The notes under the pieces were generated by a model, which searched no databases, was not told the DNA's origin, and worked only from the letters and a program-made list of their open reading frames with translations. A stretch of DNA of 64,000 nucleotides, from positions 1 to 64,000 of IMG/VR virus record IMGVR_UViG_3300024308_000188; one strand, 5' to 3'. Both the position numbers and the translations under genes were made by a program. Below, piece after piece: positions 31,629 to 46,651 of this stretch; position 1 is the first letter of the stretch; every line of letters begins with the position of its first letter.

Positions 31629-32723
31629 TTACAGCTTTTGCATTTTAACTACAGAGCGAGTATTTGGAATTATCAGAGACATAACCTCTGACAGTAACCA
31701 GCCCTTAGTTGTATCGCCTTGGTTTGCACCATCGGTCGGAGTAGATTCAATGCCACCGCGAGAACCTAAAGTTGCGTGATATTCATTATCAGCAACAATG
31801 TACGCTTCACCGCGAGACAGAACACGTTGGTTTTCAGGACGGAAACCGTCAGTAGTTAATTCCAGACCGAAGATAGTTGCAACACGGCCAGTCATAACTA
31901 ATTCGTACTGAGATACTGGAGTCAGTGTATTGGCCCAGGCACCTTCAGATTGAATATCTTCCCAAAAACTGTTTGCGATAACAGCGCGACTTACTGGTAA
32001 GTTCCAATCACGAATTTGTGTTGAAGCACGAGCGATAACGGCAGGAGTAAATGCACCAGCGAAAGCAGCTAAAGTATTTGCTTTACCTACAGTTGCATCA
32101 GCAGCACGTTTCCACACGCGGTCAGCAGCAGTGATCATACCTTCAACAGCATCGTTGTAAGCGTGGTCTAACAGATCGTGAGTCGCTTGACCCAAATCCA
32201 GTTTGTTCACGCGAACAGCAGCTTTCAATTCAAACTCTGGTGGCGTGAAATATTTATCACGCATCATTTGGTAAGAAATTGAAGTTGGGCCAGTAGCTAA
32301 AACGGCTTTAGCTTGATGGCGAGGCATTGGAACTTTTTGAGTTTCACCTTGCTTCAGGTTATTGATCACACACAGATTGCGTGAAAAACCTTGACGACTT
32401 GCTTGTTCACGAACGTCAGCAGCAATGTGAGCACCTAAAGCAGCCCACTTATTAGGACATGCTTTTGCGGCAACTAAAATATCACGTTTCTGCTCGGCAG
32501 ATAATGACAGGAAAGAATCAGGCGTTGCAGCTTGAACAACAGTACCGCTTGATACTGATTGTAAAAGTTGGCCAATTTGTTTTAACAGATCTGCATTGCT
32601 TGATGCGTTAATTTCACCGTTAGATGAAAGTGCAGCCATACCTTGTCCGGCAAAACGAAGATCGTGCAAAGGTGCGCCGTTCTTCAGTTGATAAGAAGCG
32701 CCGACTTGTAAATTGGTTTTCAT
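31629..32723 (-). CDS. Major capsid protein
   Basis: ATG at 32723 after GGAG. GEINASSxxDL N-terminus and the ELVMTGRVATIFG...GF, GGIESTP and GWLLSE motifs recall this jumbo-phage group. Lies downstream of the scaffold gene and is followed by a strong terminator. Confidence 0.85.
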   Translation of the reverse strand: MKTNLQVGASYQLKNGAPLHDLRFAGQGMAALSSNGEINASSNADLLKQIGQLLQSVSSGTVVQAATPDSFLSLSAEQKRDILVAAKACPNKWAALGAHIAADVREQASRQGFSRNLCVINNLKQGETQKVPMPRHQAKAVLATGPTSISYQMMRDKYFTPPEFELKAAVRVNKLDLGQATHDLLDHAYNDAVEGMITAADRVWKRAADATVGKANTLAAFAGAFTPAVIARASTQIRDWNLPVSRAVIANSFWEDIQSEGAWANTLTPVSQYELVMTGRVATIFGLELTTDGFRPENQRVLSRGEAYIVADNEYHATLGSRGGIESTPTDGANQGDTTKGWLLSEVMSLIIPNTRSVVKMQKL

Positions 32724-32770
32724 ACTGTATTTCTCCACAAAAATTTGATTCAAGTTTTAATCAGTAACTA

Positions 32771-33472
32771 TTAGTTACCAACTTCAACTGTCAGGAAAGG
32801 TGAACCAGCGTTCGGCACTTGTACAACTTTAACATTCGTTAATTCTGTACCATTACCTGAAGCACGTAACATACCGCCAGCGCCCATCTTCGGATGGATA
32901 ACACCAGTCCAGTCGTCAGAAGCAAAGAACAAGTTTGTAGAGATTGTGCCTTCGATTACAGCACCAACTACACCCATAACAGAAGCCGGACTGTTACCTA
33001 CACCACCGAAGTAATCGCCAGTTTCAGCAACTGCTTCAGAAGCTAACAGTTCATAATGATACTGAATTAATACTGATTCGCCAGCAGCATTACCGTGGAA
33101 CAGTAAAGTGTTGGCTGGAGTCAGAACAACTGAAGTATCAGCAGTTGGTGCAGCTGTGCCAGTTTCAACAGTTAATTTAACGCCAGCAACTTTAACCAGA
33201 ATCTGTGCAGATTGTGGAGTACGATCTAACTGAACAGTCAAATCATCCAGTTCAGCAATTTCAACAACTTTAGTTGAGAAAGTTGTTGGCAGGTTTGTTG
33301 AACAAGCGAAGCCACCAAAAATTTCACCAGAAACGCCAGTTGAAAGACGAGCACGTAACTCACCTTCTTCCTGAACTAAAGCTAAAGTGAAACCTTCTTC
33401 TTTGATACCAACGCCGTCGGCCAGAACGCGGTCAACGGTCTTGAAGAAACGAGTATTTGCATAGTTAAGCAT
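32771..33472 (-). CDS. Capsid accessory/decoration protein
   Basis: Between scaffold and capsid genes. Beta-rich, with the GEIFGGFA motif. Confidence 0.6.
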   Translation of the reverse strand: MLNYANTRFFKTVDRVLADGVGIKEEGFTLALVQEEGELRARLSTGVSGEIFGGFACSTNLPTTFSTKVVEIAELDDLTVQLDRTPQSAQILVKVAGVKLTVETGTAAPTADTSVVLTPANTLLFHGNAAGESVLIQYHYELLASEAVAETGDYFGGVGNSPASVMGVVGAVIEGTISTNLFFASDDWTGVIHPKMGAGGMLRASGNGTELTNVKVVQVPNAGSPFLTVEVGN

Positions 33473-33506
33473 GGTTTATCTCCAGAACTGAAAAATTTCA
33501 AAGCCG

Positions 33507-35840
33507 TTACGAATCTAAAAGACTCAGGTAACGATTTGTTTGTGGTTTGTGAGCAGATTCAGATTGAAGAGTTTGAGGCTTAACCGTGGTTAAGTTAGAC
33601 AAACGATCTTCCACTGTATTACTTTCACTTGTTAAGCCACCGCGATTCACAGAAGCAGAAACTACAAGTTGTGTAATTTCGTCTTGAGTATCTTCTGATT
33701 TTTCCAGAAGTTCACGAGCTTGACCTAAAAGGATTTCGCTGTAACGATCACCGTGTTGAGCAAAAGCATCTGAAACCAATGAGTCAGCGTTACGAACTCC
33801 AGCAGAAGATAATGCACTAATCAGAGCATCAGCAACTGGGTTTCTTACATTTGCAAAAACATGACGGTTAATGCCTAAAGCCGAAGTAGCTAATGCTGAC
33901 ATTAAACGATCCATACGATGTTCCATATCTGCATTTATTTCAGCTTGAACATTTGCAGAGTATGATTGCATTTGTGTCTCGACTTCACGAACACGGCTTT
34001 CGCTGCGTTTAATGATTTCGTTAGACACAACAGCATCAACATCAAGGTCTGGACTGATACGTTCAAAGTTAAATTCAGCTAATGCACTTTCAATGCCTTC
34101 AGCTTTCGCATGAGCCATGATAGCGGAACCGAATTTAGCGCTTTCAAAAATATCTTTCAGTGCAGCTTTATCAGCGACACTTGACTCAGACGCCATAGCT
34201 ACAGGAAGTTTTCCATAGAATGCTGTCCAAGTTGATTGACCTTCAATTTTACCGCAGTGAGCAACATGGAATTTATCAACAGATAAATCTTCCGTTGCAG
34301 AAATTGCAGATAACAAATCGACGTCGAATTCCATTACAGGAGATTCAGAACTTTCTGATTCTAAATCCAGACCTTCGATGTCACCGTAGTCACCTTCGTC
34401 ATCTAATTCAGTATCTTCGATTTCTTCTTCAGATTCTTCTTCAGATTCATCCATTTCAATGGACTCTTCTTCAGTTTCGTCATCTTCCATTTCTTCATCT
34501 TCTGATTCGGCCAGAAGTGCGGCAATGTCGGAATCCAATTCAATGTCATCAGAACTTTCTGATTCCATATCGTCTGAATCTAAAGCAGACATTTCTTGAT
34601 CAAGAGCATCTAAATCATACTCTTCATCTTCGTCAGCACTTACAGATTCAAACTCGTCGTTTTCATCATAAGATTCTGATTCAAGAATGTCATCGCTTGA
34701 TAAATCTTCTTCAGCATCTGGATCTAAATCTTCATCCAGATCGCTGTCAGAACTTTCAGATTCCAGTTCTTCTTCGAATTCTAAATCAGAGGCAAGATCT
34801 GCTTCGAGGTCGTCATAATTAACTTCCTCCATTTCTTCCTCTTCTTCGGTTTCTTCTTCGTCACCTGATTCAGCAAGTAACGCAGCGATTTCAGCATCTA
34901 ACTCTTCGTCAGCGCTTTCGCTTGAGATACCTAATTCGTTTTCCAGTTCTTCGATTTCAGCCGACAGTGCTTCCAGTTCTTCATCTTCAGAATCATCTTC
35001 TGAGTGTGAATGGAAATCAGCCGGATCTAACAAACCGCTGGCACAACGAGGACAGTTCAATACAGAACTTGAGGTACTGATTACGTGTGCGCCACAACCG
35101 TCAACATCTGAACAAATATAATGTTCAGCTTCTACGTTGTCGCTACCGTCAGAACTTTCACTCTGCATAGTAATTTCAGAGGCTTCAGCTTCTTCGATGT
35201 CTGGCGATCCGGTTAATGGATCATAATCAAATGAATCACTGGCATGAGTTACAAAAACCGAATGGCCTGAAGTAATAACACGTTGACTTTGATTTGAAGC
35301 TACGGCACGGAAGTTTTCAAGTGCTTCATCTAAGTTATCACCTGAAACTACAATCATGCCTTCAGAAGCTTCAGCTTCTAAATCTTCGTATTCAACATCA
35401 TCCATTTCTTCTTCAGTTTCTTCTTCCGGTTCTTCATCTTCCATCGATACCAGATCTTCATCATCTGATAAATCGACTCCTTCATCTTCTTCAGGCATAG
35501 CGCTTGAACATGAAGGACAGAAAGTGACAGGGCAGTCAGCAACAACATGCTCACCGCAACCATCAGAACATACGCCGTAGAAAACATCTACGGCTCCAGT
35601 ACGAGCGCTGGCTTCAGCAGAAAATTCACCATTGTCCAAAGCATCAAGATCAAAATCTCCTGTGTCTGGATTATATAAAGATGTTGCTGACGCATGAGTA
35701 TAAAACTCATTTGTACCGTCTGTGAAAGCTTGAAGGCTTTCTCCAGAAGCAACAGCTGTATATTTAGCGATAGCCTCTGCCTCACTTGCGCCATGAACTA
35801 TGATAGCCTGTTTTGAGGCTTTCATTTTTGTCTTGATCAT
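33507..35840 (-). CDS. Prohead scaffold/core protein, highly acidic, with two Zn-ribbon repeats
   Basis: D/E-rich centre, about 20 S/A-x-S motifs, helical C-terminus, upstream of the capsid gene. ATG at 35840 after AGGAG. Confidence 0.75.
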   Translation of the reverse strand: MIKTKMKASKQAIIVHGASEAEAIAKYTAVASGESLQAFTDGTNEFYTHASATSLYNPDTGDFDLDALDNGEFSAEASARTGAVDVFYGVCSDGCGEHVVADCPVTFCPSCSSAMPEEDEGVDLSDDEDLVSMEDEEPEEETEEEMDDVEYEDLEAEASEGMIVVSGDNLDEALENFRAVASNQSQRVITSGHSVFVTHASDSFDYDPLTGSPDIEEAEASEITMQSESSDGSDNVEAEHYICSDVDGCGAHVISTSSSVLNCPRCASGLLDPADFHSHSEDDSEDEELEALSAEIEELENELGISSESADEELDAEIAALLAESGDEEETEEEEEMEEVNYDDLEADLASDLEFEEELESESSDSDLDEDLDPDAEEDLSSDDILESESYDENDEFESVSADEDEEYDLDALDQEMSALDSDDMESESSDDIELDSDIAALLAESEDEEMEDDETEEESIEMDESEEESEEEIEDTELDDEGDYGDIEGLDLESESSESPVMEFDVDLLSAISATEDLSVDKFHVAHCGKIEGQSTWTAFYGKLPVAMASESSVADKAALKDIFESAKFGSAIMAHAKAEGIESALAEFNFERISPDLDVDAVVSNEIIKRSESRVREVETQMQSYSANVQAEINADMEHRMDRLMSALATSALGINRHVFANVRNPVADALISALSSAGVRNADSLVSDAFAQHGDRYSEILLGQARELLEKSEDTQDEITQLVVSASVNRGGLTSESNTVEDRLSNLTTVKPQTLQSESAHKPQTNRYLSLLDS

Positions 35841-35918
35841 CGTGTGGCTCCTGTTAAAGTTCATATACAGAGTGTCATTCCGTATACCATTAAATTAAGT
35901 TTTACAACTAAGAACAGC

Positions 35919-35968: not shown

Positions 35969-37012
35969 TTAAGACAATTGCTTCATAATTGCTCTAAGCT
36001 TTTTATGTCCAGGTTTGCCAATATTGACGTATCTTCTATTCATTCCTGTAGTGTAAGCTAAAATACCTAAGCTTGACATTAAAGTTTTAGCTGCTTTTGC
36101 TTTTGCTTCTTCACCAAAATTTACTTGAATGTTTCCGTGACCATCATCTTTAGCCTTCATAAATAAAGCAAGCGTTTTTTTATTTGCTTCATCTAATTTT
36201 GGTTTTTTAGCCATTTCAGATCTTATAGATTTCAGGTCTTTCAGGTAGTAGTTAAGTTCAATACTGTCACCTAAATGTTTGCTTTTGTTTTCAGGTGAAG
36301 TTAAAACATCGTACATCTTTTGCATTTTAGCTATAGCAGCATCAACAGCAGCTAAAGTTTCTTTTGTTGGAATACCTTCGGACTCAAGTTTTTTGTCCAA
36401 GGCTTTCCATACTTTGATTGCGTCATTAACAGGATCTTTTGTTGGAACATAAAGTTCACTTACTTTAGATACTTTAACCGGAGTATTGTCTCCAATATCA
36501 TGTTTGGTTTCTTTTGTATCAGGCTTACCATTATTAGATTGGCTCTCAGACTTAACAAGAGAAAGTAATTTTCTTCCGCTTAAACGTGGGCCAACATACT
36601 GACGAGTAACCTTACCGCCGTCTTTATGGAAAAGCCACCAACCTGGAGCCATCATTCCAGGAGCACGTTTTTTAACGCCCATCTTTGTAGAGGCTGCATT
36701 ATTTTTTGCACCAGGTGCTTTAGCTGCCGCTTCTGCTTGCAATTCATCTTCAGGTTCAGAGTAAGCTTCTGTACTTACATTGAAATCTTCCGATTTAGAA
36801 ACCATTTTATTGCTAAACATTTTCACATTCATAGATGGTGAAAATTTAGTTTCGTCTTTGAAACGGGCTAAAGCAAAATCGCCTTGTCTTGTTTTGAAAA
36901 CATAACGTCCTGATTCCGCAAAAACTAAACGGCCTTTAGCTTGTTCCAAAACATACTGAACACTGTTCGGCACGGCTGGCTTCTTTGCCGAAACGCTCAA
37001 CGAGATAATCAT
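35969..37012 (-). CDS. Basic putative head protein with S-x-S leader, paralog of the 37045-38745 N-domain
   Basis: MII-SLSVS-AKK, then PNSVQY...GRY...APGA...GWW...RLSGRKLLSL. Confidence 0.7.
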   Translation of the reverse strand: MIISLSVSAKKPAVPNSVQYVLEQAKGRLVFAESGRYVFKTRQGDFALARFKDETKFSPSMNVKMFSNKMVSKSEDFNVSTEAYSEPEDELQAEAAAKAPGAKNNAASTKMGVKKRAPGMMAPGWWLFHKDGGKVTRQYVGPRLSGRKLLSLVKSESQSNNGKPDTKETKHDIGDNTPVKVSKVSELYVPTKDPVNDAIKVWKALDKKLESEGIPTKETLAAVDAAIAKMQKMYDVLTSPENKSKHLGDSIELNYYLKDLKSIRSEMAKKPKLDEANKKTLALFMKAKDDGHGNIQVNFGEEAKAKAAKTLMSSLGILAYTTGMNRRYVNIGKPGHKKLRAIMKQLS

Positions 37013-37044: not shown

Positions 37045-38745
37045 TCAAGAAACGTAGTGAGTTAATTCAAATGGATTTTGAGTGCGATCATCTGCATGAT
37101 AAACAGCAACAGTTAAACCTTTAGCGCTCTTACTGATCAAGCCGCCTTTAGATTTAATTGGCAACACAAAGCGAGTTGTTTTACCAGCAGCAGGTTTTGC
37201 TGTTCCATGTGTGACGATGCGTTCAAAATCGGCAGCTTCGTAGGCTAATCCTTTTGAAGCTAAACCATCGACGGCATGTTGAACGGCAGCTGAGTAAGTA
37301 GGGAAGTAAATTTGCTCACTGCTTTTTGATTGCAGTACGCTATTCGCACCACTTTGCTTACGAGCTTTTAAATCAATACGCTTGTTAAGACCATCAATGC
37401 TGGCCTGAAGTTTTTTACGACGATTAACGTCTTTTGTTTTTTCAAGCATGTCTTTCAAACGATCTATTGTTTGAACGTCACGATCAATTTCTTGATCCAA
37501 CTTTTTAACTTCTTGTTTGGCCTGTTTTACTTCAGCATTTGGAACCGTAGCTTTTGGCTTAGCTGCCGGAGCTTTAGATGCTGGCTCAGCCTTTGGTTTT
37601 TTAGCAGGAGGAACTGCTTTACCAGCTTCAGGTGATTTTGAAGGTTTTTGTTTATGAGCAGGAACTACCTGACCTGCACTTCCATTACGAATTTTTTCAT
37701 GGAAGTCAGCTAAAGCTTTTACAACCTTATCACGAAGTTTTGTTTGCTTAGCAATCTCAGCTTCTACTTTGGCTTTAGCTGGTTTTGTTTTCAACTTAGT
37801 CAACTTTTCTCTCAGTGCTTTAATAGCCTGAACAATAGCCGTGCCTTTTTCCTTCAGATTCATATAAGCTGTTTGTTGGCGTTTAGGTAACGCACTAATA
37901 TCAGACTTAGTGATCTTTCCTGTAGCAGCAGGTTTCTTAACGGCAGGAGCCTTAGCTGAAGGATTAATTTTTGGTGCAGGTTCACCAGATTTCAAAGCTT
38001 TAATCTCAGCAGAAATTTCTTTACGACGGGCAATTATTTTCTTCAGCTTTTCTTTCAAAGCAATTTTAGATGTTGCACGTTGTAAAGTGGTTAAGCGTTC
38101 TTTGCCAGCAGTAAGTTCGCCACCAAGTTTTTTGAACTCAGTCTGCAAAGCTTTGATTTGACCAGCTGCTTTTAATTCAGCACCAGTTTTCTTGGCCGGA
38201 GCTTTTTTGGTTTCGTCAATCACTTCAGTTTTTGGCTTAGGTGCTTGAGAAGGATCGATTAAAGATAAGATACGACGACCACTGATGCGGCCACCAGCAA
38301 AAGCTTTTGCAACTTTACCGTCATTACCTTTACGGAAAACCCACCAACCTTTTGATAAGGTATTTGGTGCATGTGTTTTCTTGCCCATCTTTGAGTCAAG
38401 ACCAGAAACTTTCGCACCAGGTGCAGCACTCAAAGAATCCATTTCAATTGGCTCAAGTGCAAAGATTTGTTCTTGTGTAAGATCCATATCACTTGCAGTA
38501 ACCTTGAAAACTTTAGTGGCTACGCTTGGACTCATTTTAACGTCATCTGCAATCCGCACAATAGCGAAGGTTGCACGACGATTTTTTAAAATGTAACGGC
38601 CTGGAACAGCAAACACAACACGAGATTTCGATTTTTCCGCAGCATACTTAATGCTATTCGGAATTACAACTGGTTTCTTAGCTTTTGGCTTGGCTGCATT
38701 TTTATCATGCACAGGCGTAACCTTGGCTTTAATCGGCTTTTTCAT
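37045..38745 (-). CDS. Lys/Ala-rich coiled-coil putative internal head/DNA-condensing protein
   Basis: Histone-H1-like KKPA/KAPA linkers. C-terminal domain TYSAAVQHA...KPAAGKT...FELTHYVS follows QSKSS. ATG at 38745 after AAGGA. Confidence 0.7.
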   Translation of the reverse strand: MKKPIKAKVTPVHDKNAAKPKAKKPVVIPNSIKYAAEKSKSRVVFAVPGRYILKNRRATFAIVRIADDVKMSPSVATKVFKVTASDMDLTQEQIFALEPIEMDSLSAAPGAKVSGLDSKMGKKTHAPNTLSKGWWVFRKGNDGKVAKAFAGGRISGRRILSLIDPSQAPKPKTEVIDETKKAPAKKTGAELKAAGQIKALQTEFKKLGGELTAGKERLTTLQRATSKIALKEKLKKIIARRKEISAEIKALKSGEPAPKINPSAKAPAVKKPAATGKITKSDISALPKRQQTAYMNLKEKGTAIVQAIKALREKLTKLKTKPAKAKVEAEIAKQTKLRDKVVKALADFHEKIRNGSAGQVVPAHKQKPSKSPEAGKAVPPAKKPKAEPASKAPAAKPKATVPNAEVKQAKQEVKKLDQEIDRDVQTIDRLKDMLEKTKDVNRRKKLQASIDGLNKRIDLKARKQSGANSVLQSKSSEQIYFPTYSAAVQHAVDGLASKGLAYEAADFERIVTHGTAKPAAGKTTRFVLPIKSKGGLISKSAKGLTVAVYHADDRTQNPFELTHYVS

Positions 38746-38860
38746 ACGAGTTCCTTTGTACACGGTTAATTTGTCTTACCTAACTAAATTATAGATTTAA
38801 GTGGAAAACAATGAGGGAAATGAAAAAAGCCAGCGAACACTTGGTTCAACTGGCTTTTGA

Positions 38861-39689: not shown

Positions 39690-40346
39690 TTAACCAAAAT
39701 TCTTGAAAACCTGAGCAAACACTTTCATGTAATCTTTACGAATGCCGTGTTTGTATATACGAATAAGAATAGGTTCATATAACTCAAGAACTTTATGCAA
39801 TTCGGTTACAGCAGCCGAATACGTAACTTGAGATAAAGAACTTTGACCGCTGTTTGACATATCCAAATAAAACTTAGCGCAAGCGTATAACAGATTAGCT
39901 ATATTTTCGCTTTTAAAGTTTGCGATCATTCTAACACTATCAAGTAACTCTCTGCGAAGTTTTGAAGCTACTTCTATATACTGGGTTTCATTATTCGCTT
40001 GTATTAGTGAAGGATTGGCAATAAGTGAGGTAGAACATTTTGCTATAAATTCTTTAACCCACTCGCTATCTTTACTTTTCCACGGAGAAGTACCGTATAA
40101 AATTCTGCGTTTGAGATTTGAGATTTCAAGATCAAACTTTGCAACCTCTTCCTGAAGATTTCGTTTACGAGTATTAAAGCTTTTATCACTTTCTATTTCG
40201 TTTGCGTCCTGAGTTGTGGCGTTTACCACACGGTCGATTTCACCTAAAGCACGTACTACGGATTGACGCTCAAGGTACAACGCGCAAATTCTTTGAAACT
40301 CTTCATCTTCTTGACTTGATTCTGAAATGAATACACGAATTTTCAT
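39690..40346 (-). CDS. Helical protein with S-x-S leader
   Basis: N-terminus MKIRVFI-SES-SQ. Confidence 0.7.
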   Translation of the reverse strand: MKIRVFISESSQEDEEFQRICALYLERQSVVRALGEIDRVVNATTQDANEIESDKSFNTRKRNLQEEVAKFDLEISNLKRRILYGTSPWKSKDSEWVKEFIAKCSTSLIANPSLIQANNETQYIEVASKLRRELLDSVRMIANFKSENIANLLYACAKFYLDMSNSGQSSLSQVTYSAAVTELHKVLELYEPILIRIYKHGIRKDYMKVFAQVFKNFG

Positions 40347-40554: not shown

Positions 40555-41775
40555 TTATTTAAGTAAGGGAGCGACAATTTTGCTGATAACAGCTTTACTA
40601 ATTGGTTTACTCATGTCAAAAGTTTCACCAAAACTGGCCTTATACTTAGTCATGTGCATCATCTTACCATTTTTGATTCCGAAACGTGCTTTAACGGTTC
40701 CGCGACGTGGATGATAAAAACTAATGCCACCAGGTGTAGGTATTAAGTCAATACCTTTTGCCTTAAGATCTTTGCCGAATTTATCAACAACATATTGACT
40801 TGCTTCATTGAATTTTCCTGTTGACGCAGGTTTTTCAACAGTATTGGTTTTGATCTTAAGATTCTTGGTAATAGCCTCCAAAACTTCTGCGTTAGTTCCT
40901 TTCACCAGTTTATGGTTAGTAACCTTAGTAGATTTCGGCCCATCCTCTTCGATCATTACAATGCCAGTACCGACATAAATATTTAGTTTATTGTTGCCGC
41001 CTACAGTAATCATATTGATAGGTAAGGAAACAGCAAAGTGATTGTATCTGTGTGCAGGTACATTAGGTGACGGACTAAAGTGCTCACGTACACGAGCTTT
41101 AATAGTCATGCCATCACCGAAAGCTTTTTTCAAGCTACGTGCAATAGAGGCTCCTAATTTCTTCACTGAATCTGCGTCTTTGTACAAAACCATATCCAAC
41201 TCTTTTACAGCATTACCAGTTATTTTTGCTAACTGGTAAACATCAGCATCCGTATCTTTATAAAGTTTCAATTCGATTGCACGATCTAAAACTTCTGACC
41301 AAATATCGTCGGCAGTGACAGGATTTCTCACTGCTTTTTCTGTGGTCTTAGAACGCATAAAATTCCGAACACCCATACCAAGGCCATGATGCGATCTGGC
41401 ATAGGCTTTAGCACGATCTGTTTTATTCAGTTGAGCTAAAGTAGCTATAGCTTCTGGAAATTCTTTTGCCACCAAACGTACAGTTGCATCAGAGAAAAGC
41501 TGTTTCTTTGTTTTTGAATCAGCAGCTGAAGGTTTAACCTTAACTTCACGGGAATCAGCTTTACCAAGCTTAGCAATCTGAGCAAACACACGTTTGATTT
41601 CTGCGCCATTGAATTCTTTCTTTTGCAATTTTTCTGTAATAGTATCAGGTGTTGCTTTGCCAGTAAACTTAACCAGAACTTTATCGTCAACAGACACTTC
41701 AAAACTGGTGCCAACTTGATTTACTACAATATCACGCTTACGCGCTGAGGTTGATGTGAATACACGAATTTTCAT
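40555..41775 (-). CDS. Basic multidomain protein with S-x-S leader
   Basis: MKIRVFT-STS-AR. Internal HHGLGMGVRN...ADDIW segment. Confidence 0.7.
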   Translation of the reverse strand: MKIRVFTSTSARKRDIVVNQVGTSFEVSVDDKVLVKFTGKATPDTITEKLQKKEFNGAEIKRVFAQIAKLGKADSREVKVKPSAADSKTKKQLFSDATVRLVAKEFPEAIATLAQLNKTDRAKAYARSHHGLGMGVRNFMRSKTTEKAVRNPVTADDIWSEVLDRAIELKLYKDTDADVYQLAKITGNAVKELDMVLYKDADSVKKLGASIARSLKKAFGDGMTIKARVREHFSPSPNVPAHRYNHFAVSLPINMITVGGNNKLNIYVGTGIVMIEEDGPKSTKVTNHKLVKGTNAEVLEAITKNLKIKTNTVEKPASTGKFNEASQYVVDKFGKDLKAKGIDLIPTPGGISFYHPRRGTVKARFGIKNGKMMHMTKYKASFGETFDMSKPISKAVISKIVAPLLK

Positions 41776-41802: not shown

Positions 41803-41849
41803 AATTACTTGAATTCTTTTTAGAGCGACCAATTACTTGAATTCTTTTT
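41803..41849. repeat. 19-bp direct repeat duplicating a gene 3' end
   Basis: aattacttgaattcttttt at 41803-41821 and 41831-41849. Confidence 0.9.
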
Positions 41850-42510
41850 TCACTGGACGACCCTGAGAAGGTCGAGATTTTTGATCCAGCTTTAGTTTGA
41901 CAGTTATATAAACTTCGTCTGTGCCGACAGTGCTTGTCATTTGTGGATAGTCAACAACTTCCATACTAAAACTTCTGACATCATGTGTTTTAGTATTTTT
42001 AGCAACAAGCTTATCAATGCGGTCAGCAAAAGCCAGTTTACATTTAGCTGCAACTTCAAGACCTTTATCTTGAACAATATTCTCTTTCTGACGAGTCATT
42101 TGTTGGATTGCTACATTCCAACCGAAGTCTGCGGTCTTAGATTTTTTAGCAGGTGCTCCAACTGATTTGGCTTTAGCCATTCTTTTTAATGTAGCAATTG
42201 CTTTGGTAGCAGCACCAGAGCTAAAGTGGAGACAATAGCCAGTTTTATCCACAGCAGAAGTTATATGTGCTGGATTGACTCCGAGCAAAGTAGCTAACTC
42301 TTCAACTTTATTTTGAGCAACGTGTGATTTACGTGCAAGTCGGATAGCATAAGCTAATCCATCAATGGTCTTAACAAAAGGTTTAGTTACCTTTAGTTCC
42401 CTGATCAATTTATTATCTGACTCAAACAATAAGGAACCTAATTCAGCAAGTTTTGCTTTAAATGCACGAGTTGTCGAAGCAGATTCAGAAATTAATATAT
42501 TAACCTTCAT
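41833..42510 (-). CDS. Basic protein with S-x-S leader
   Basis: Start at ATG 42510: MKVNILI-SES-AS. Confidence 0.7.
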   Translation of the reverse strand: MKVNILISESASTTRAFKAKLAELGSLLFESDNKLIRELKVTKPFVKTIDGLAYAIRLARKSHVAQNKVEELATLLGVNPAHITSAVDKTGYCLHFSSGAATKAIATLKRMAKAKSVGAPAKKSKTADFGWNVAIQQMTRQKENIVQDKGLEVAAKCKLAFADRIDKLVAKNTKTHDVRSFSMEVVDYPQMTSTVGTDEVYITVKLKLDQKSRPSQGRPVKKEFK

Positions 42511-42518: not shown

Positions 42519-42851
42519 CTACCAAAGATCGTTGTATGCCCAATACGCAGCTTGCCATTTATCTTTATAAGCTGGCTTACCATTAGACTTTAAGATGCCA
42601 CGAAATCTTTTGCGAAAATTTTCTCTACGTTCAGGATCTTTGTGAGTAGTGAAATCTTCATAGTCAACATGGCCATACTTTATTAGTTTAAAATTATTTC
42701 CTTTACGTGCTAATACCGCACGTTTGTAGCGCTTATCCTTTATTTCAATGGGTTTATCAAAATCAATGAAAGTCATTCCCTTGTATACAAGTTTACCATT
42801 TTCTTTTTGAATACTGTCTACACTTGTACAAAGACTCACAAGAATTTTCAT
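42519..42851 (-). CDS. Tlr6F/DUF5754-like small basic protein with leader variant
   Basis: MKILV-SLC, then KLIKYGHVDYEDFTTHKDPERRENFRKRF...AAYWAYNDLW. Confidence 0.65.
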   Translation of the reverse strand: MKILVSLCTSVDSIQKENGKLVYKGMTFIDFDKPIEIKDKRYKRAVLARKGNNFKLIKYGHVDYEDFTTHKDPERRENFRKRFRGILKSNGKPAYKDKWQAAYWAYNDLW

Positions 42852-42865
42852 AAGCTCACCTAAAG

Positions 42866-43040: not shown

Positions 43041-43042
43041 TC

Positions 43043-43645
43043 TTACTCTTCCGCTTGAACTTTACTTAGCTTACTTAAAAGCTGTCTACCAAGCTGATTC
43101 TTAAATTTATCCAACTTACCAGGAGTCTTTAAAACATCCAAAGCTTTCTGGTGAGCAAGCTTTAACTCTTTGTAGTTATCTCGTTCACGCTCAAAAGTAG
43201 CTAAAGCTTTCTTTTTGGCGATAGGATTAGTTGCGTTTTCTGCATCTTTCTTTGCTTTCAACGCTCTATTTTTGTGACTTTCCAGTGAAGCAGTTGTTTC
43301 TTCACTATCAGCATCCAAACCAAACTCTTCCATAGCGCCAGAAAATCTTTTGGCGAAACTTTGCTGCAAATCGTCATCCAGTTTAGATACTTCTTTTAAT
43401 AGATTAGGATCTAAACCTTTAGATGCTTCTGCAAATCTAGGATCTAAGCCGGATGCGAATTGGCCAGTCCTTGATTTACGTTCCTTATGTTTTGCCATAC
43501 GCATATGATGTTTAGCGTACTGACTATTTGGATGTTCTTCAATATATTCTTTTTTAGCTTCGTCTGAAAGTTCATCAAACCAATTGGAGCCTCCAATTTT
43601 TTTAGGTTTGTTATTTGAAGAGCTAATAAATACTTTGATTTTCAT
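43043..43645 (-). CDS. Protein with S-x-S leader and WFxxLS...YIxxHPxS motif
   Basis: MKIKVFI-SSS-N, then NWFDELSDEAKKEYIEEHPNSQYAK. Confidence 0.7.
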   Translation of the reverse strand: MKIKVFISSSNNKPKKIGGSNWFDELSDEAKKEYIEEHPNSQYAKHHMRMAKHKERKSRTGQFASGLDPRFAEASKGLDPNLLKEVSKLDDDLQQSFAKRFSGAMEEFGLDADSEETTASLESHKNRALKAKKDAENATNPIAKKKALATFERERDNYKELKLAHQKALDVLKTPGKLDKFKNQLGRQLLSKLSKVQAEE

Positions 43646-43682
43646 AGGGCCGCCTTAATAGTAGGAATCGAACGCATTAAGT

Positions 43683-44510
43683 TCATACATCAAACTTTTT
43701 CTGTGCAGCAGCTGAAGTAAAGAACCAATTATATCCTTTAAGGACTCTTTTGGTTACAGGATCTTTAGCTGACCACGTAAGAATCTTTGAGCGTTTACCT
43801 GCTAATACAGCAAAAATCGAAGCGGTTTCACCGATCTTTGGTCTGACTGAACGGGCTTCACTTAAAGTTTTTTTCTTTGTTTCTTTACCTTCAATAACAA
43901 CTAAATAACTATAGCCTTGTGCTTTAAGTTCAGCACGTTTCTTAGCGGATTCCGCATCGTGTATAGCATCGTTACGCTTTTTCTGAACTCCAGCTAATTC
44001 TTCACGTTGTTTTTGAAGTTTAGCTATTTGTTCATCTAAGGCTTTTATGCGTTGTTTGTCTTTTGCCTCAGTTTTGTTAAAGAATGCTGTTGTATCTTTA
44101 GAATTTGTAGTAAGTGTTATACTCTGACTTCCAACATCTTCTTTTGTTATTTTGTTTCCGATTAAACTCAAAAGTTTAGCTTTAGTTAATGTTAAAGTTG
44201 ATAAATTGCCGGGATGCTTACGTGTAAGAGAATTGTCACGCTCTGCAACAGCAACTATGGATTTAACTGATCCAGATTTAGTGCTATTCACTTCGGTTAT
44301 ACGATAGTTAGTGGCCGCCTTTGTTATAACAGGAGGCATCTTTTTGTAGCGCTCTATAGTTTCTTTCGGAATAAAGCCAATGCTCGGTCTTGGTGGAGTC
44401 TTTTTAGTTGATACTATTGTATATAAAGTAAAAGTACCGCCAACAACAATTTTCTTTTCTTGGGCAGCAGTTAAATCTGCGCTCTCAGACAACATAACTT
44501 GAATTTTCAT
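43683..44510 (-). CDS. Basic protein with S-x-S leader
   Basis: N-terminus MKIQVML-SES-AD. Confidence 0.7.
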   Translation of the reverse strand: MKIQVMLSESADLTAAQEKKIVVGGTFTLYTIVSTKKTPPRPSIGFIPKETIERYKKMPPVITKAATNYRITEVNSTKSGSVKSIVAVAERDNSLTRKHPGNLSTLTLTKAKLLSLIGNKITKEDVGSQSITLTTNSKDTTAFFNKTEAKDKQRIKALDEQIAKLQKQREELAGVQKKRNDAIHDAESAKKRAELKAQGYSYLVVIEGKETKKKTLSEARSVRPKIGETASIFAVLAGKRSKILTWSAKDPVTKRVLKGYNWFFTSAAAQKKFDV

Positions 44511-44528
44511 AAGATTTTCCTATTGAAT

Positions 44529-44927
44529 TTATTTAAGAGAAGCACTTTTGGTGCCTTTCTTAGATTTAAGAGTAGCCTTTTCGCCGTTCAACAGTTTTGC
44601 CAAAGCAGCCGCAGATAAAGGTTTAATTTCATCTTTTGAATGTTTACCTTCTGGAGCAATCAACACTCTTTTTAATTTTCCGTTGCCAGCTATTTCAACT
44701 TCTTTGATGACAAGAGTATATTTGTTTAGTTGTGGAGTTACTTTGTTATCAGCCTTACGTGTGTAAGCACCTGTAACAACCATAAGAAGTTTCGTTCCTT
44801 TGGTCATAAGTTTTTTGATTTGTGACGAAGTAAATCTGTCGTCAGCCAACTGTCTGAATTTAGAGTCAGATGCTTTAAGTCTGGCCAAAGAGTACGAACT
44901 TTGCGAAACGAATACTTTGATTTTCAT
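44529..44927 (-). CDS. Basic protein with S-x-S leader
   Basis: N-terminus MKIKVFV-SQS-SY. Confidence 0.7.
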   Translation of the reverse strand: MKIKVFVSQSSYSLARLKASDSKFRQLADDRFTSSQIKKLMTKGTKLLMVVTGAYTRKADNKVTPQLNKYTLVIKEVEIAGNGKLKRVLIAPEGKHSKDEIKPLSAAALAKLLNGEKATLKSKKGTKSASLK

Positions 44928-44936
44928 ATGTTTTCC

Positions 44937-45857
44937 TTAAATTTTAATTAAGCGATCACCAGTTGGATTTCCGTTAATTAAAAAGTTGTTATCGAAGTAT
45001 TGTTTTGCAAGTTCCCAACCATCTGTGCAGCTTAAACCACGTTCAGATTTACCGTGAACCATATACTCACACAATGTAGCCCAAGCTTCTTCATACCAAG
45101 GATAAGTATATCCTGCATGATTAAATTGATCTGGATGCAAACGTCTTGCAACCAAAGCTTGTTTGTAACGCTCCATCTGAGATTGACGTACAATGCCATC
45201 ATACATTAAAAAGTGAGCAAGCTCGTGCGTGATAACTTGAGCAAGGAATCCTGAAGTTATTGCACCTGAACGTAAGCCTTGAAGTTGATTGAAGTTCAGA
45301 ACAAGCAACTGACGCGCTTTTATAGAGGCATCGGTTTGACGACTGAAGCAAGTAGGTACTACATCAGATTTACACAGAATAAAATGATTTAAGTTGATCT
45401 TCTTCTTAAATCCTGTGTAATCTAAAGCTTGATTTACGGCCTTACGCTCAATGTCAGCTAATGGGTAGCACCATTCATTTCTTCTGCGTTCAAGATTTTC
45501 CTCAAGAAAACCTATTGCTAATGGATGCGCTTTTTTAATTGCAGGAGGTTGAAGAACAACACGGTAGTTGTAATTCAATGTTGCACTTTCGCTAACAATA
45601 TCCTTAGAGTCAATGGCAACAGGTTTAATGTTGTTTAGTGTAATCCAAACAGAATCGAACAAAGCAGGATCGCCATTAAGCATTAAGCTTTTTTCAACAA
45701 GATCTCGCAAAGTACGTTCATCAACTACAGCAACAGCGCCTTTGTCATCACGAATTTTAATACGTGAATCTAAGTACACATGCCAGAAATGATTACGCTC
45801 TATTTTAAACCATTCACCTAATTGGAATGGAGTATCTGAATTGTATCTGAATTCCAT
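44937..45857 (-). CDS. Zincin-like metallopeptidase
   Basis: VITHELAHFL followed by YEEAWATLCE. Internal IV-SES-A precedes the catalytic region. Confidence 0.7.
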   Translation of the reverse strand: MEFRYNSDTPFQLGEWFKIERNHFWHVYLDSRIKIRDDKGAVAVVDERTLRDLVEKSLMLNGDPALFDSVWITLNNIKPVAIDSKDIVSESATLNYNYRVVLQPPAIKKAHPLAIGFLEENLERRRNEWCYPLADIERKAVNQALDYTGFKKKINLNHFILCKSDVVPTCFSRQTDASIKARQLLVLNFNQLQGLRSGAITSGFLAQVITHELAHFLMYDGIVRQSQMERYKQALVARRLHPDQFNHAGYTYPWYEEAWATLCEYMVHGKSERGLSCTDGWELAKQYFDNNFLINGNPTGDRLIKI

Positions 45858-46651
45858 TAGCGCACCATCATAATGTTTTTAGGATCGTGTTGGTTACTTA
45901 CGTAAGCCGGATTTTCAACTTGGCTGCATTCAAAACCAGTTGAATCGTGACACCAACGGTAAACAATTTGCCCATCTTTCAAGTACGGCTTGCGACCTAA
46001 ACGAGTATGTGAACAAGTTAACATAGTGTCTTGGTGGGTAGTGTGGCCGCAATAACTGCAAGTGTAACTTGTGTAATAAAATCCTACGCTATGCGTATTG
46101 CATTCGTTTGTCAGAATGCGATTACAGATTTCAGGATCACGAGTACGATCATATGCCAACAGCAGAATTAATTTTGCGTGATTGTTACGGAAACCACGAA
46201 GCGGTTTTAAATAAGCATCTAAAATAATGCCACGCGCTTTGGTGTGATCCTGATTATCATGTTCGCGGAAAGTTGGTTTACCTTTGTAAGTTTTGTATGC
46301 TTGCATACCCAACTTAGGTTTGAACTGTAACAACTCACTCAAGCTTGCACTATCGCCATTTGTATTTGGCAGATCTGTGATTAATGCCGGAGTAGGAACC
46401 ATTACATAATCACGAATATCAGGACTTGTGTTGTAAACTTTTGCAGCGGCTGGAAGCCAAGCATTAACATCAAGTACAACACCCTCACAGCCACCAACCA
46501 TTTCTGGTTTAGCTGTGATTGCCATATTGTTTTTTGAAAGTTTGTGCAGATCTATACCGCGACCTTCACCTTCACGAACTGAATAACGGCCAATATCAAA
46601 AGAAGAAGATACAAACTTACCTATATCCGTATTTAACTTAACAGGAACCAT
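45857..46651 (-). CDS. Prohead (maturation) protease with CxxC insertion
   Basis: GKPTFREHD (His), GIILDAY, HSVGF (Ser) and FECSQVENPAY fit the caudoviral/herpes-fold prohead protease pattern. ATG at 46651 after AAGGAG. Confidence 0.75.
   Translation of the reverse strand: MVPVKLNTDIGKFVSSSFDIGRYSVREGEGRGIDLHKLSKNNMAITAKPEMVGGCEGVVLDVNAWLPAAAKVYNTSPDIRDYVMVPTPALITDLPNTNGDSASLSELLQFKPKLGMQAYKTYKGKPTFREHDNQDHTKARGIILDAYLKPLRGFRNNHAKLILLLAYDRTRDPEICNRILTNECNTHSVGFYYTSYTCSYCGHTTHQDTMLTCSHTRLGRKPYLKDGQIVYRWCHDSTGFECSQVENPAYVSNQHDPKNIMMVR

What the first reader, a model, noticed from the sequence alone, without database searches (positions are those of the whole stretch)
31629..46651. Prohead protease specificity readable from the scaffold: about 20 S/A-x-S sites, plus sites in the capsid protein and at domain boundaries
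Seen: the acidic scaffold repeats QSESS, HSHSE, EALSA, SSESA, LAESG, ESESS (3x), ESESY, ESVSA, LAESE, SAISA, ASESS, QSYSA, SALSS, VSASV, TSESN and QSESA, plus related AEAS (3x). The capsid protein N-region has AALSS, QSVSS and FLSLSA. The protease itself has FVSSSF near its N-terminus. The motif also sits at apparent domain junctions: MDSLSA and LQSKSS (37045 ORF), IVSVST (38861), IVSESA (44937), RSQSSD (8836), and LESKSS and LVSNSS (47207). Established: large-phage scaffolds are cut at many copies of the protease motif. Inference: the protease at 45857-46651 cleaves after [S/A]-x-S rather than after Glu, and several ORFs are polyproteins matured inside the head.
Basis: partly seen in the sequence, partly recalled or inferred. 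Interest (0 to 1): 0.75.

Follow-up and report, generated by a model that had tools for sequence, protein, structure and literature searches.

The report
Ser/Ala-specific prohead protease and capsid-targeting leaders
In this giant phage, a short motif (a hydrophobic residue, then Ser-x-Ser) marks the scaffold, the capsid protein's N-terminal piece, the head protease's own N-terminus and a roughly 10-residue leader on about 18 unrelated proteins, so it is most likely the cutting and packaging signal of a T4-like head protease that cuts after small residues instead of after glutamate.

Summary
The bare [S/A]-x-S count in the scaffold is what composition predicts (28 observed, 23.4±4 expected). 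With a hydrophobic residue two positions upstream (phi-x-S-x-S) the motif is strongly enriched: 14 observed against 3.0±1.6. Five orthologous scaffolds show the same enrichment (z 6-8).

At least 18 minus-strand ORFs in the window start with a 6-20-residue leader ending in phi-phi-S-x-S, such as MKIKVFISSS. That is 14 strict matches in the first 25 residues against 0.64 expected. The proteins are unrelated beyond the leader, and all six Ser codons are used.

The same motif precedes the mature part of the capsid protein (conserved in 18 of 18 close homologues) and sits at the protease's N-terminus across its family. Higher-GC relatives (Lu11, HRDY3, PaBG) carry phi-A-x-A at homologous positions, so the requirement is for small Ser/Ala residues at P3 and P1.

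The protease has the T4 gp21 fold (Z 10.7). In PaBG the published ~20% mass loss of the capsid protein fits the predicted site.

No cleavage has been mapped, and a neighbouring zinc metalloprotease is a weaker alternative. Internal "polyprotein" sites are supported for three sites in two ORFs, not for two others.

The parts
45857..46651 (-). Prohead serine protease (264 aa) with a T4 gp21/assemblin fold and a CCCH zinc insertion
   Evidence: phrog_18299 head maturation protease, E 7e-88. AF2 model pLDDT 81.6. T4 gp21 5jbl: Z 10.7 with 149/165 residues aligned; VZV protease Z 5.6; Foldseek prob 0.87. Invariant in 34 homologues: E130, H131, S188, D168, R169, C198, C201, C213, E241, S243; H215 is >=90% conserved.
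46601..46615 (-). Predicted self-cleavage site FVSSS|F (residues 13-17) at the protease N-terminus
   Evidence: phi-x-[SA]-x-[SA] followed by F/L is conserved at this column in most of the 34 aligned homologues (S-x-S, S-x-A, A-x-S, A-x-A, S-x-C variants; the most divergent rows lack it).
44937..45857 (-). KMPT-N-like N-terminal domain plus zincin (HELAH) metalloprotease. This is the rival protease or a packaged cargo.
   Evidence: HELAH motif conserved in the L008, JA11 and Y3 orthologues. Homologue found in NCTB, JA11 and Y3, not in PaBG, Lu11, HRDY3, Voja-6, GR11A or RSL1. Its IVSES|A site (45585-45599) is not conserved.
33507..35864 (-). Acidic scaffold-like protein (785 aa) with 19 phi-x-[SA]-x-S sites. 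PHROG labels its family 'ATPase'.
   Evidence: phrog_20988. 14 phi-x-S-x-S against 3.0±1.6. Predicted fragments between sites are 10-75 aa after an N-terminal 237-aa piece. At least 5 sites are positionally conserved in orthologues, including one about 15 aa from the C-terminus.
31629..32723 (-). Major capsid protein (364 aa from the internal Met), HK97 fold
   Evidence: phrog_2522. AF2 pLDDT 84.4. HK97-fold matches up to Z 14.7, aligning from model residues about 60-110 onward.
32499..32513 (-). FLSLS|A (residues 71-75): predicted maturation cut of the capsid protein, removing 20.6% of the chain
   Evidence: [FIY]-x-S-[LM]-S is conserved in 18/18 homologues of 57-99% identity. It lies in a lower-confidence loop just before helix 76-88. 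The aligned PaBG site VAAA|E at residue 80 gives 79% residual mass, and PaBG's capsid protein is reported to lose 'about 20%'.
32550..32639 (-). Two upstream propeptide sites, MAALS|S (res 29-33) and LQSVS|S (res 54-58)
   Evidence: Both columns keep small residues at i and i+2 across the family. The PaBG-like clade has L-S-x-S|TGEINA and Lu11/HRDY3 have L-S-S-A|TGEFNA.
46665..47210 (-). Leader ORF: MKKAKLFLSTS|G
   Evidence: no PHROG family
47207..48904 (-). Leader ORF: ...SLFVSES|ARK (P1 = residue 17). Linker sites LESKS|S and LVSNS|S.
   Evidence: The leader is conserved in L008 (GLISES|A) and NCTB (LVSLS|N). The linker sites are present but at shifted positions in orthologues.
44529..44927 (-). 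Leader ORF: MKIKVFVSQS|S
43683..44510 (-). Leader ORF: MKIQVMLSES|A
   Evidence: The L006 orthologue has MKVFISHS|A.
43043..43645 (-). Leader ORF: MKIKVFISSS|N
   Evidence: The L006 orthologue has ...LVSES|A at the aligned place.
42519..42851 (-). Variant leader ORF: MKILVSLC|T (Cys at P1)
   Evidence: The L006 orthologue (80% identical) has LVSTS|K at the aligned place.
41833..42510 (-). Leader ORF: MKVNILISES|A
40555..41775 (-). Leader ORF: MKIRVFTSTS|A
39690..40346 (-). Leader ORF: MKIRVFISES|S
35969..37012 (-). Leader ORF: MIISLSVS|A, paralogue of the 37045 ORF
   Evidence: NCTB orthologues start MKIISIS|A and MKIVSIS|A; L006 starts MIISIS|S. PaBG gp83 in the same position is a virion protein.
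37045..38763 (-). 572-aa head-module protein with internal sites MDSLS|A (38428-38442) and LQSKS|S (37321-37335)
   Evidence: The first site aligns with LDSLS|E and VESES|N (L006) and IDSES|A (NCTB). The second aligns with LKSTS|A (L006).
8836..11631 (-). 931-aa protein with an internal LRSQS|S (10609-10623) eight residues before a KMPT-N domain
   Evidence: PF20294 at residues 349-411. The two other KMPT-N proteins carry the motif as an N-terminal leader at the same distance from the domain.
53381..55078 (-). KMPT-N protein with leader ...NLLSLS|A (P1 = residue 20)
   Evidence: The JA11 orthologue starts MLSQS|A.
27013..27693 (-). KMPT-N protein with variant leader MLIVVSAT|N
   Evidence: Orthologues start MLISLS|A (NCTB), MLISIS|V (L006), MLLSLS|A (L008) and MLFFVSVS|A (JA11).
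6334..8001 (-). Type IB topoisomerase-like protein with leader MIISIS|A
   Evidence: PF01028 E 1e-15. The PaBG orthologue starts MHTSLS|A.
4375..5129 (-). Two leader ORFs: MKKKQLLLSES|A (4375-4638) and MKILISLS|G (4635-5129)
11641..12189 (-). Leader ORF: MRILISLS|S
14637..15062 (-). Leader ORF: ...KRFLSIS|S (P1 = residue 15)
2747..3139 (-). Ala-variant leader ORF: MKVKVFVAKA|T

Best explanation
The window is the head and tail module of a jumbo myovirus of the Lu11/PaBG/NCTB/Erwinia-Dickeya group.

Its prohead protease (45857-46651) has the T4 gp21/herpesvirus-assemblin fold. It most likely binds substrates as an extended strand and reads alternate side chains: a hydrophobic residue at P5 (and P4 in leaders), and a small Ser (or Ala) at P3 and P1. 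It then cuts after P1, usually before Ala, Ser or Gly. The motif has four predicted uses.

1. A 6-20-residue N-terminal leader (typically MK-I-x-V-F-I-S-x-S) acts like the T4 capsid-targeting sequence. It brings about 18 otherwise unrelated proteins into the assembling core and is then clipped off. These proteins include a type IB topoisomerase, three KMPT-N proteins and, outside the window, a 2022-aa helicase.
2. About 19 copies chop the acidic scaffold into 10-75-residue peptides that can leave the shell. One cut removes the last 15 residues.
3. Three copies in the first 75 residues of the capsid protein remove its propeptide, leaving Ala76 as the mature N-terminus.
4. One copy at residues 13-17 of the protease trims the enzyme itself.

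What is shown: the motif's enrichment, its positional conservation and its concerted Ser/Ala variation; the protease fold and invariant His131/Ser188; the HK97 fold of the capsid protein.

What is inferred: that the motif is a cleavage site, that this protease cuts it, that the bond cut is the one after the second small residue, and that the leader targets proteins to the head.
For: - Leader enrichment. The strict motif [FLIMV][ILVT]-S-x-S occurs 14 times in the first 25 residues of the 67 window proteins, against 0.64±0.73 in shuffles (maximum 3). The other 190 proteins of the genome have 4 against 2.2 expected (Fisher p=3e-6).
- Selection acts on the peptide. Leader proteins share nothing beyond the leader (only 2 weak pairs in all-vs-all BLAST), and all six Ser codons are used at P3/P1.
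- Scaffold. phi-x-S-x-S has z 6.9, and z 6.1-8.1 in the orthologous scaffolds of L006, L008, NCTB, JA11 and Y3. phi-x-E and phi-x-[SAG]-x-E are not enriched.
- Concerted switch. Lu11, HRDY3 and PaBG scaffolds are enriched for phi-A-x-A instead (z 5-8). Their leaders read M-x-IALA and their capsid and scaffold sites carry Ala at aligned positions.
- Conservation of sites. The capsid-protein site is conserved in 18/18 close homologues. The protease N-terminal site is conserved in most of its aligned family. The scaffold has at least 5 aligned sites.
- Protease fold. T4 gp21 Z 10.7.
- Published data on PaBG. Its capsid protein loses about 20% of its mass and several virion proteins are processed (PMC7412058). 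The predicted PaBG site gives 79% residual mass. The PaBG homologues of two leader proteins (the 221-kDa helicase, which starts ...LNSLS|A, and gp83) are virion proteins.
- Precedent. T4 gp21 cuts at L/I-x-E, T4 uses a 10-residue capsid-targeting sequence, and gp21 has a motif copy near its own N-terminus (PMC9026906).
Against: - No cleavage product has been observed for this phage, and no site has been mapped in any relative that I could find.
- The bare S-x-S count is compatible with composition.
- A position matrix built from the leaders also scores sites in non-structural proteins, so the motif alone does not predict cleavage.
- A zincin gene next to the protease co-occurs exactly with the Ser dialect.
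- The more distant relatives RSL1 and GR11A show no enrichment of either dialect.
- No clean specificity-determining residues separate proteases of the Ser type from those of the Ala type.
- The Ser/Ala preference tracks genome GC (36-49% against 50-56%). It may therefore be drift under a permissive pocket rather than a changed specificity.
- The register differs between dialects (phi at P5 in Ser-type scaffolds, at P4 in Ala-type), so the scissile bond is uncertain by a residue or so.
Confidence: 0.7

Rival explanations
1. The motif is a cleavage signal, but the enzyme is the KMPT-N/zincin metalloprotease encoded directly downstream of the serine protease (44937-45857). The serine protease would have some other specificity, or only a partial role.
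For: A homologue of the zincin is present in every genome with the Ser-type motif that could be searched (window, L008, NCTB, JA11, Y3). None was found at E<=0.01 in any genome lacking that motif (PaBG, Lu11, HRDY3, Voja-6, GR11A, RSL1). The HELAH motif is conserved. Zincins fused to KMPT-N are thought to process polyvalent injected proteins (Pfam PF20294 description; PMC7824862).
Against: Lu11, HRDY3 and PaBG lack the zincin, yet they keep leaders and capsid and scaffold sites at homologous positions in the Ala dialect. The serine protease is the only head-module protease examined that all of them share. The serine protease carries the motif at its own N-terminus across most of its family. 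The NCTB zincin itself begins with a leader-like sequence, as expected of a cargo. In every tailed phage studied, the assemblin-fold protease processes the scaffold and capsid protein (PMC9026906). The co-occurrence has not been tested on a tree and may reflect shared ancestry or genome GC content.
Confidence: 0.1
2. The motif is functional but is not cut. The hydrophobic N-terminal strand ending in S-x-S would be a permanent docking tag or structural element, for example a beta-strand that adds to a core protein. The scaffold copies would be binding repeats or modification sites.
For: M-K-I-x-V-hydrophobic N-termini are common first beta-strands of folded domains (my own knowledge). No mass data show that the leaders are removed. 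Acidic Ser-rich repeats can be modification sites, and a family-2 glycosyltransferase gene lies nearby (48885-50009).
Against: The same motif sits exactly where the capsid-protein family is known to be shortened by about 20%. It also sits at the N-terminus of the protease itself. Several leaders are followed directly by hydrophilic, low-complexity sequence. Conservation is limited to P5/P3/P1 while P2 and P4 vary, which is the pattern expected for a strand bound in a protease cleft. T4 provides an exact precedent for a tag that is also cut.
Confidence: 0.12
3. There is no signal. The strings are a by-product of Ser-rich, low-complexity composition and of internal repeats in the scaffold.
For: Bare [SA]-x-S occurs 28 times against 23.4±4 expected. 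ESESS recurs in what looks like a repeated acidic unit.
Against: The extended motif is never reached in 2000 shuffles, including shuffles within 80-aa blocks. The enrichment is reproduced in five diverged orthologues. N-terminal enrichment is 14 against 0.64 in proteins that are not Ser-rich. Sites are positionally conserved.
Confidence: 0.02

Closest known systems
Phage T4 gp21 prohead protease with the capsid-targeting sequences (CTS) of the internal proteins IPI-III and Alt
   Same: Same fold (Z 10.7 to 5jbl). A short three-position motif is reused in the scaffold, the capsid protein, the internal proteins and near the protease's own N-terminus. A roughly 10-residue N-terminal leader is shared by otherwise unrelated, fast-evolving head proteins and ends in the cleavage motif (PMC9026906).
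   Different: T4 cuts after Glu (L/I-x-E). Here P1 and P3 are Ser/Ala, and Glu motifs are not enriched. There is no sequence-level match to Pfam protease families or to 5jbl. This protease has a conserved Cys3-His insertion. The leader is hydrophobic and strand-like, unlike the T4 CTS. Many more proteins carry it (about 18 or more).
phiKZ gp175, 201phi2-1 gp268 and SPN3US gp245 giant-phage prohead proteases
   Same: These are also jumbo myoviruses with many processed head and ejection proteins. They have small residues at P3 (S/A/G-x-E, A-x-E), multiple motif copies inside propeptides, and protease self-processing (PMC5694885, PMC10052503).
   Different: P1 is always Glu in those phages. Their propeptides are mostly long rather than a uniform short leader, and their self-processing is C-terminal. 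Here the conserved site is N-terminal.
Herpesvirus assemblin (VZV, HCMV, KSHV proteases)
   Same: Related fold (Z 5.6, 4.2, 3.4). From memory, assemblin cuts (V/L/I)-x-A|S, meaning a small P1, a small P1' and a hydrophobic residue upstream. That resembles the Lu11/HRDY3 dialect V-A-T-A|S seen here.
   Different: The fold match is much weaker than the one to T4 gp21. The third catalytic residue is not established here. Assemblin has two sites per substrate, not about 20. It is a eukaryotic virus enzyme.
Signal peptidase I 'A-x-A' rule for Sec signal peptides
   Same: Small residues at -3 and -1 after a hydrophobic stretch at the N-terminus, often after Lys at position 2.
   Different: The hydrophobic run here is only 3-5 residues, too short for a Sec h-region (my own knowledge; no predictor was available). 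The same motif occurs about 19 times inside an acidic cytoplasmic scaffold and 75 residues into the capsid protein.

Membership tests
T4 gp21-type (assemblin-fold) prohead serine protease | Assemblin/gp21 beta-barrel fold | tested here: met
   AF2 model pLDDT 81.6. 5jbl_A: Z 10.7, rmsd 3.0, 149 of 165 residues aligned. The next hits are herpes proteases. Foldseek's top PDB hit is 5jbl, prob 0.87. BFVD hits are prohead proteases.
T4 gp21-type (assemblin-fold) prohead serine protease | Conserved catalytic His and Ser | tested here: inconclusive
   H131 (E-H) and S188 (H-S-V-G-F) are invariant in 34 homologues. The third triad member is not identified.
T4 gp21-type (assemblin-fold) prohead serine protease | Sequence membership in Pfam Peptidase_S77/S78 or a PDB relative | tested here: not met
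   No Pfam hit for the protein or for any of 34 homologues at E<=1 other than zinc-finger noise. No PDB sequence or profile hit. Only PHROG 18299 matches.
T4 gp21-type (assemblin-fold) prohead serine protease | Cleavage after Glu at L/I-x-E (T4) or S/A/G-x-E (phiKZ group) | tested here: not met
   In the scaffold, phi-x-E occurs 16 times against 29.6 expected and phi-x-[SAG]-x-E 5 times against 8.2. Leaders show 0 phi-phi-E-x-E. This is an in-silico test only.
T4 gp21-type (assemblin-fold) prohead serine protease | Encoded in the head module with the scaffold and capsid genes | tested here: met
   The protease lies about 10 kb upstream of the scaffold, decoration-like and capsid genes on the same strand. 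The order is conserved in NCTB, JA11, Y3, HRDY3 and RSL1.
T4-type capsid targeting sequence | Short N-terminal peptide shared by otherwise unrelated head proteins | tested here: met
   14 strict and about 18 total leaders. All-vs-all BLAST finds only 2 weak pairs. Ser codons vary.
T4-type capsid targeting sequence | Ends in the protease's cleavage motif, which also occurs in the scaffold and capsid protein | tested here: met
   The same phi-x-S-x-S occurs in leaders, scaffold, capsid propeptide and protease, and all switch to Ala together in Lu11/HRDY3.
T4-type capsid targeting sequence | Carriers are virion (head) proteins | tested here: inconclusive
   The PaBG homologues of two carriers (the 221-kDa helicase and gp83) are among the 14 virion bands in PMC7412058. 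The others have no proteomic data.
T4-type capsid targeting sequence | Necessary and sufficient for packaging, and removed by the protease | not testable with these tools
   Needs fusion-protein packaging experiments and mass spectrometry.
HK97-fold major capsid protein with an N-terminal propeptide | HK97 fold preceded by a removable N-terminal segment | tested here: met
   Z up to 14.7 to HK97-fold capsid proteins, aligned from about residue 60-110. Residues 1-75 form a separate strand/helix segment with a confidence dip at 61-80. Removal is inferred from the PaBG mass loss.
Sec signal peptide / signal peptidase I substrate | Hydrophobic h-region of about 7-15 residues before A-x-A | tested here: not met
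   Leaders have 3-5 hydrophobic residues. The motif also occurs internally in cytoplasmic proteins. No signal-peptide predictor was available.

The most novel reading that the evidence does not exclude
A whole clade of jumbo phages uses a gp21-fold head protease whose P1/P3 specificity is for small Ser/Ala residues, as in herpesvirus assemblin, rather than for Glu. The clade includes Lu11, PaBG, NCTB, the Erwinia and Dickeya 'Lupandier' phages and many uncultured relatives. These phages also use a portable hydrophobic leader of about 10 residues ending in that motif as a capsid-targeting sequence. If so, the packaged and injected proteome can be read directly from any genome of the clade. Here it would include a type IB topoisomerase, a 2022-aa helicase, KMPT-N proteins and a zincin.
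Probability: 0.55. Interest if true: 0.7.

Novelty: new variant of a known kind. Interest (0 to 1): 0.62.

Why it matters
All mapped T4-fold prohead proteases (T4, phiKZ, 201phi2-1, SPN3US) cut after glutamate. A member that reads Ser/Ala would show that this fold can change its P1 preference. It would also narrow the gap to herpesvirus assemblin, which cuts Ala|Ser.

In practice, the leader gives a simple rule for listing the proteins this poorly known jumbo-phage clade packs into its head and probably injects. About 18 such proteins lie in this window, most with no known family.

The leader is also a candidate tag for loading foreign proteins into capsids of cultured relatives, as the T4 CTS is used.

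The prediction is cheap to test on phages already in culture (Y3, JA11, Lu11, PaBG).

Tried and rejected
- Sequence searches of the protease against Pfam and PDB, as a single sequence, as a 34-sequence profile and member by member, gave only zinc-finger noise. Only structure comparison placed it.
- A position matrix trained on 17 leaders did not pick out most scaffold sites, because P4 differs. It scored about as many sites in non-structural proteins, so it cannot predict internal sites on its own.
- A search for residues that separate Ser-type from Ala-type proteases found none convincing. A changed pocket is therefore not supported over a permissive one.
- RSL1 and GR11A were examined as a possible third dialect. 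No enriched motif was found.
- Literature searches for mapped cleavage sites in Lu11, PaBG, RSL1, Y3 or phage G found none in the held library. Subscription papers on RSL1 and Y3 could not be read.
- The S1 pocket could not be inspected because model coordinates are not exposed.

Full report
**Context**

The window is the first 64 kb of a 214.5-kb IMG/VR virus record, estimated 85% complete. Nearly all genes lie on the minus strand.
- PHROG profiles identify the ORF at 45857-46684 as a head maturation protease (E 7e-88) and 31629-32753 as the major head protein.
- 32771-33472 is a virion structural protein and 28659-30284 a tail sheath.
- 33507-35864 belongs to a family labelled 'ATPase'.
- The closest cultured relatives are jumbo myoviruses at 43-50% protein identity: NCTB, Lu11, HRDY3, PaBG, Dickeya JA11/AD1 and Erwinia Y3/Alexandra. 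phiRSL1 and phage G are distant.

**The observation**

The bare motif is not remarkable in a protein that is 13% Ser and 10% Ala.
- [SA]-x-S occurs 28 times against 23.4±4.0 in shuffles. S-x-S occurs 20 times against 13.0±3.2.
- Most of the listed sites have a hydrophobic residue two positions before the first Ser. With that residue included, the motif stands far above chance.
- [FLIMV]-x-S-x-S occurs 14 times against 3.0±1.6, and [FLIMV]-x-[SA]-x-S 19 times against 5.4±2.1. No shuffle out of 2000 reaches either count, even when shuffling is confined to 80-residue blocks.
- An unbiased scan of all three-position class patterns ranks it first among patterns that are not simply runs of acidic residues.

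Reading the N-termini shows that many minus-strand ORFs begin with nearly the same peptide. Examples are MKIKVFISSS, MKIRVFISES, MKIRVFTSTS, MKIKVFVSQS, MKIQVMLSES, MKVNILISES, MKKAKLFLSTS, MKKKQLLLSES, MKILISLS, MRILISLS, MIISIS and MIISLSVS. Some ORFs have longer versions ending at residues 15-20.
- The strict pattern [FLIMV][ILVT]-S-x-S occurs 14 times in the first 25 residues of the 67 window proteins, against 0.64±0.73 expected (maximum 3 in 200 shuffles).
- In the other 190 proteins of the genome it occurs 4 times against 2.2 expected (Fisher p=3e-6).
- Control patterns (T-x-T, S-x-x-S, S-S, E-x-E) are not enriched in this way.
- The carriers are unrelated beyond the leader: all-vs-all BLAST finds only two weak pairs.
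- The two Ser positions use all six Ser codons, so selection acts on the peptide and not on the RNA. Ribosome-binding sites precede the starts.
- Nine consecutive genes between the protease region and the scaffold (39690-48904) carry a leader, and most have no PHROG family. This is what one expects of fast-evolving internal head proteins.
- Carriers with a recognisable domain include a type IB topoisomerase (6334-8001) and three KMPT-N proteins.
- Outside the window, carriers include a 2022-aa helicase and a 69-aa basic protein.

**Capsid protein and protease**

In 94 capsid homologues, the site F-L-S-L-S|A (residues 71-75 counted from the internal Met) is kept as [FIY]-x-S-[LM]-S in all 18 sequences of 57-99% identity.
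- Two further sites upstream (M-A-A-L-S|S and L-Q-S-V-S|S) lie in columns that keep small residues at i and i+2 much more widely. The PaBG-like clade has L-S-x-S|TGEINA.
- The AF2 model has the HK97 fold (Z up to 14.7). Solved mature capsid proteins align from about residue 60-110 onward. The predicted cut lies in a lower-confidence loop just before helix 76-88.
- The protease carries F-V-S-S-S|F at residues 13-17. In most of the 34 aligned homologues, down to about 40% identity, this column reads phi-x-[S/A]-x-[S/A] followed by Phe or Leu, with all four Ser/Ala combinations and one Cys.
- The protease model (pLDDT 81.6) matches T4 gp21 with Z 10.7 over 149 of 165 residues, and herpesvirus proteases more weakly.
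- E130, H131, S188 and three Cys are invariant, and H215 is conserved in at least 90% of the 34 homologues. There is no sequence-level match to Pfam or PDB.

**Relatives: replication and a concerted switch**

The scaffold enrichment is reproduced in every Ser-type orthologue tested: two metagenomic contigs at 66-68% capsid identity (z 7.0 and 7.2), NCTB (6.1), JA11 (7.3) and Y3 (8.1). Their neighbouring genes carry the same kind of leader.
- Glu-type motifs are never enriched.
- Lu11 and HRDY3 show no S-x-S enrichment at all. Their scaffolds are instead full of V-A-T-A-S, V-A-V-A-S and L-A-T-A-S. phi-A-x-A occurs 17 times against 3.7 and 15 times against 3.8 (z 7.7 and 6.3). PaBG is similar (z 5.1).
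- Their leaders read M-N-I-A-L-A, M-I-I-A-L-A and M-E-M-M-I-A-L-A where the window has M-I-I-S-I-S and M-K-I-L-I-S-L-S.
- Their capsid protein has L-S-S-A|TGEFNA.
- At least five scaffold sites align position for position, with Ser in one group and Ala in the other.
- All substrate classes therefore change together, which points to one recognising agent that needs small residues at P3 and P1.
- The preference follows genome GC (36-49% for Ser, 50-56% for Ala), and no protease residues cleanly separate the groups. I therefore read it as a permissive Ser/Ala pocket with lineage drift rather than as two specificities.
- RSL1 and GR11A show neither dialect.

**Which protease?**

The gene after the serine protease (44937-45857) encodes a KMPT-N-like domain plus a zincin with a conserved HELAH motif.
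- Its homologue is present in all Ser-type genomes that could be searched. It was not detected in any other genome. I did not expect this correlation, and it keeps the rival alive.
- Against the rival, the Ala-type phages keep homologous sites without the zincin.
- The serine protease is the only head-module protease examined that all of these genomes share, and it carries the motif on itself.
- The NCTB zincin itself starts with a leader-like peptide, as a cargo would.

**Experimental anchors from the literature**

For PaBG, the authors report that some virion proteins are proteolytically processed and that the capsid protein loses about 20% of its mass (PMC7412058).
- The PaBG residue aligned with the window's Ser75 lies in V-A-A-A|E. 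Cutting there leaves 79% of the mass.
- Two of PaBG's 14 identified virion proteins are homologues of leader carriers here. One is the 221-kDa helicase, whose own N-terminus reads ...L-N-S-L-S|A. The other is gp83, encoded just upstream of the scaffold.
- T4 supplies the mechanistic precedent: gp21 cuts at L/I-x-E, a 10-residue capsid-targeting sequence ends in that motif, and a motif copy lies near gp21's N-terminus (PMC9026906).
- The phiKZ group cuts at S/A/G-x-E or A-x-E.
- I found no paper that maps cleavage sites in the Lu11/PaBG group.

**Internal sites**
- M-D-S-L-S|A and L-Q-S-K-S|S in the 37045 ORF align with motif copies in orthologues and paralogues.
- L-R-S-Q-S|S in the 931-aa 8836 ORF lies eight residues before a KMPT-N domain. 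That is the same spacing at which the two other KMPT-N proteins carry their N-terminal leader.
- In the 47207 ORF the acidic linker always holds a motif copy, but not at the same place.
- I-V-S-E-S|A (44937 ORF) and I-V-S-V-S|T (38861 ORF) are not conserved.
- 'Polyprotein' processing is therefore plausible for a few proteins, but it is not a general feature.

**Verdict**

The motif is real, selected and shared by exactly the set of proteins that a prohead protease would be expected to process. The most likely reading is a gp21-fold protease with Ser/Ala specificity at P3/P1, together with a leader that works like a capsid-targeting sequence. The cut itself, the exact bond and the targeting role remain inferences.

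Noticed in passing
window 44937-45857 (-): A KMPT-N-like domain fused to a zincin (HELAH) metalloprotease is encoded immediately after the prohead protease. A homologue is present in exactly those relatives whose scaffolds use the Ser dialect of the motif (NCTB, JA11, Y3, L008) and was not found in the Ala-dialect or no-motif relatives.
   Followed up: partly
window 6334-8001 (-): A eukaryote/poxvirus-type topoisomerase IB (PF01028, E 1e-15) carries the N-terminal leader MIISIS|A. The PaBG orthologue starts MHTSLS|A. This suggests a topoisomerase packaged in the head, as in poxvirus virions.
   Followed up: partly
window 33507-35864 (-), residues about 20-285: The scaffold's N-terminal part is a tandem duplication of a module of about 120 residues. 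Each copy ends in a four-Cys zinc-ribbon-like motif (C-x4-C ... C-x2-C), conserved in orthologues. PHROG calls this family 'ATPase', which looks like a misannotation.
   Followed up: no
window 45857-46651 (-), residues 198-215: The prohead protease has a Cys3-His cluster (C198, C201 and C213 invariant; H215 >=90% conserved) inserted after the catalytic Ser strand. It is probably a structural zinc site not described for T4 gp21.
   Followed up: no
window 8836-11631, 27013-27693, 53381-55081 (-): Three proteins carry the KMPT-N domain (PF20294), which is typical of injected 'polyvalent' proteins. In all three the cleavage-like motif sits about 8 residues upstream of the domain.
   Followed up: partly
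window 125-1732 (+): A phage-encoded GroEL-type chaperonin (PF00118, E 2e-72). It is the only large plus-strand gene in the window.
   Followed up: no
genome G000:C1:79885-85953 (-), locus L020: A 2022-aa SF2 helicase-like protein starts with ...GEFTSTS|A. Its PaBG homologue (1969 aa, 221,159 Da, N-terminus ...LNSLS|A) matches the largest virion band reported for PaBG.
   Followed up: yes
window 59144-60445 and 60464-61555 (-), plus 28659-30284 (-): Two adjacent paralogous sheath-like genes (phrog_12249) lie in the window in addition to the main tail sheath gene. This fits the duplicated sheath reported for the PaBG group.
   Followed up: no
window 42519-42851 (-): One leader has Cys at the predicted P1 (MKILVSLC|T) where the 80%-identical orthologue has Ser. 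One protease homologue also shows S-E-C at its N-terminal site.
   Followed up: partly
loci L004 (phiRSL1) and L013 (Vibrio phage GR11A): These distant relatives share the protease, scaffold and capsid genes. They show no enrichment of either the Ser or the Ala motif in the scaffold, so their protease may read something else.
   Followed up: partly
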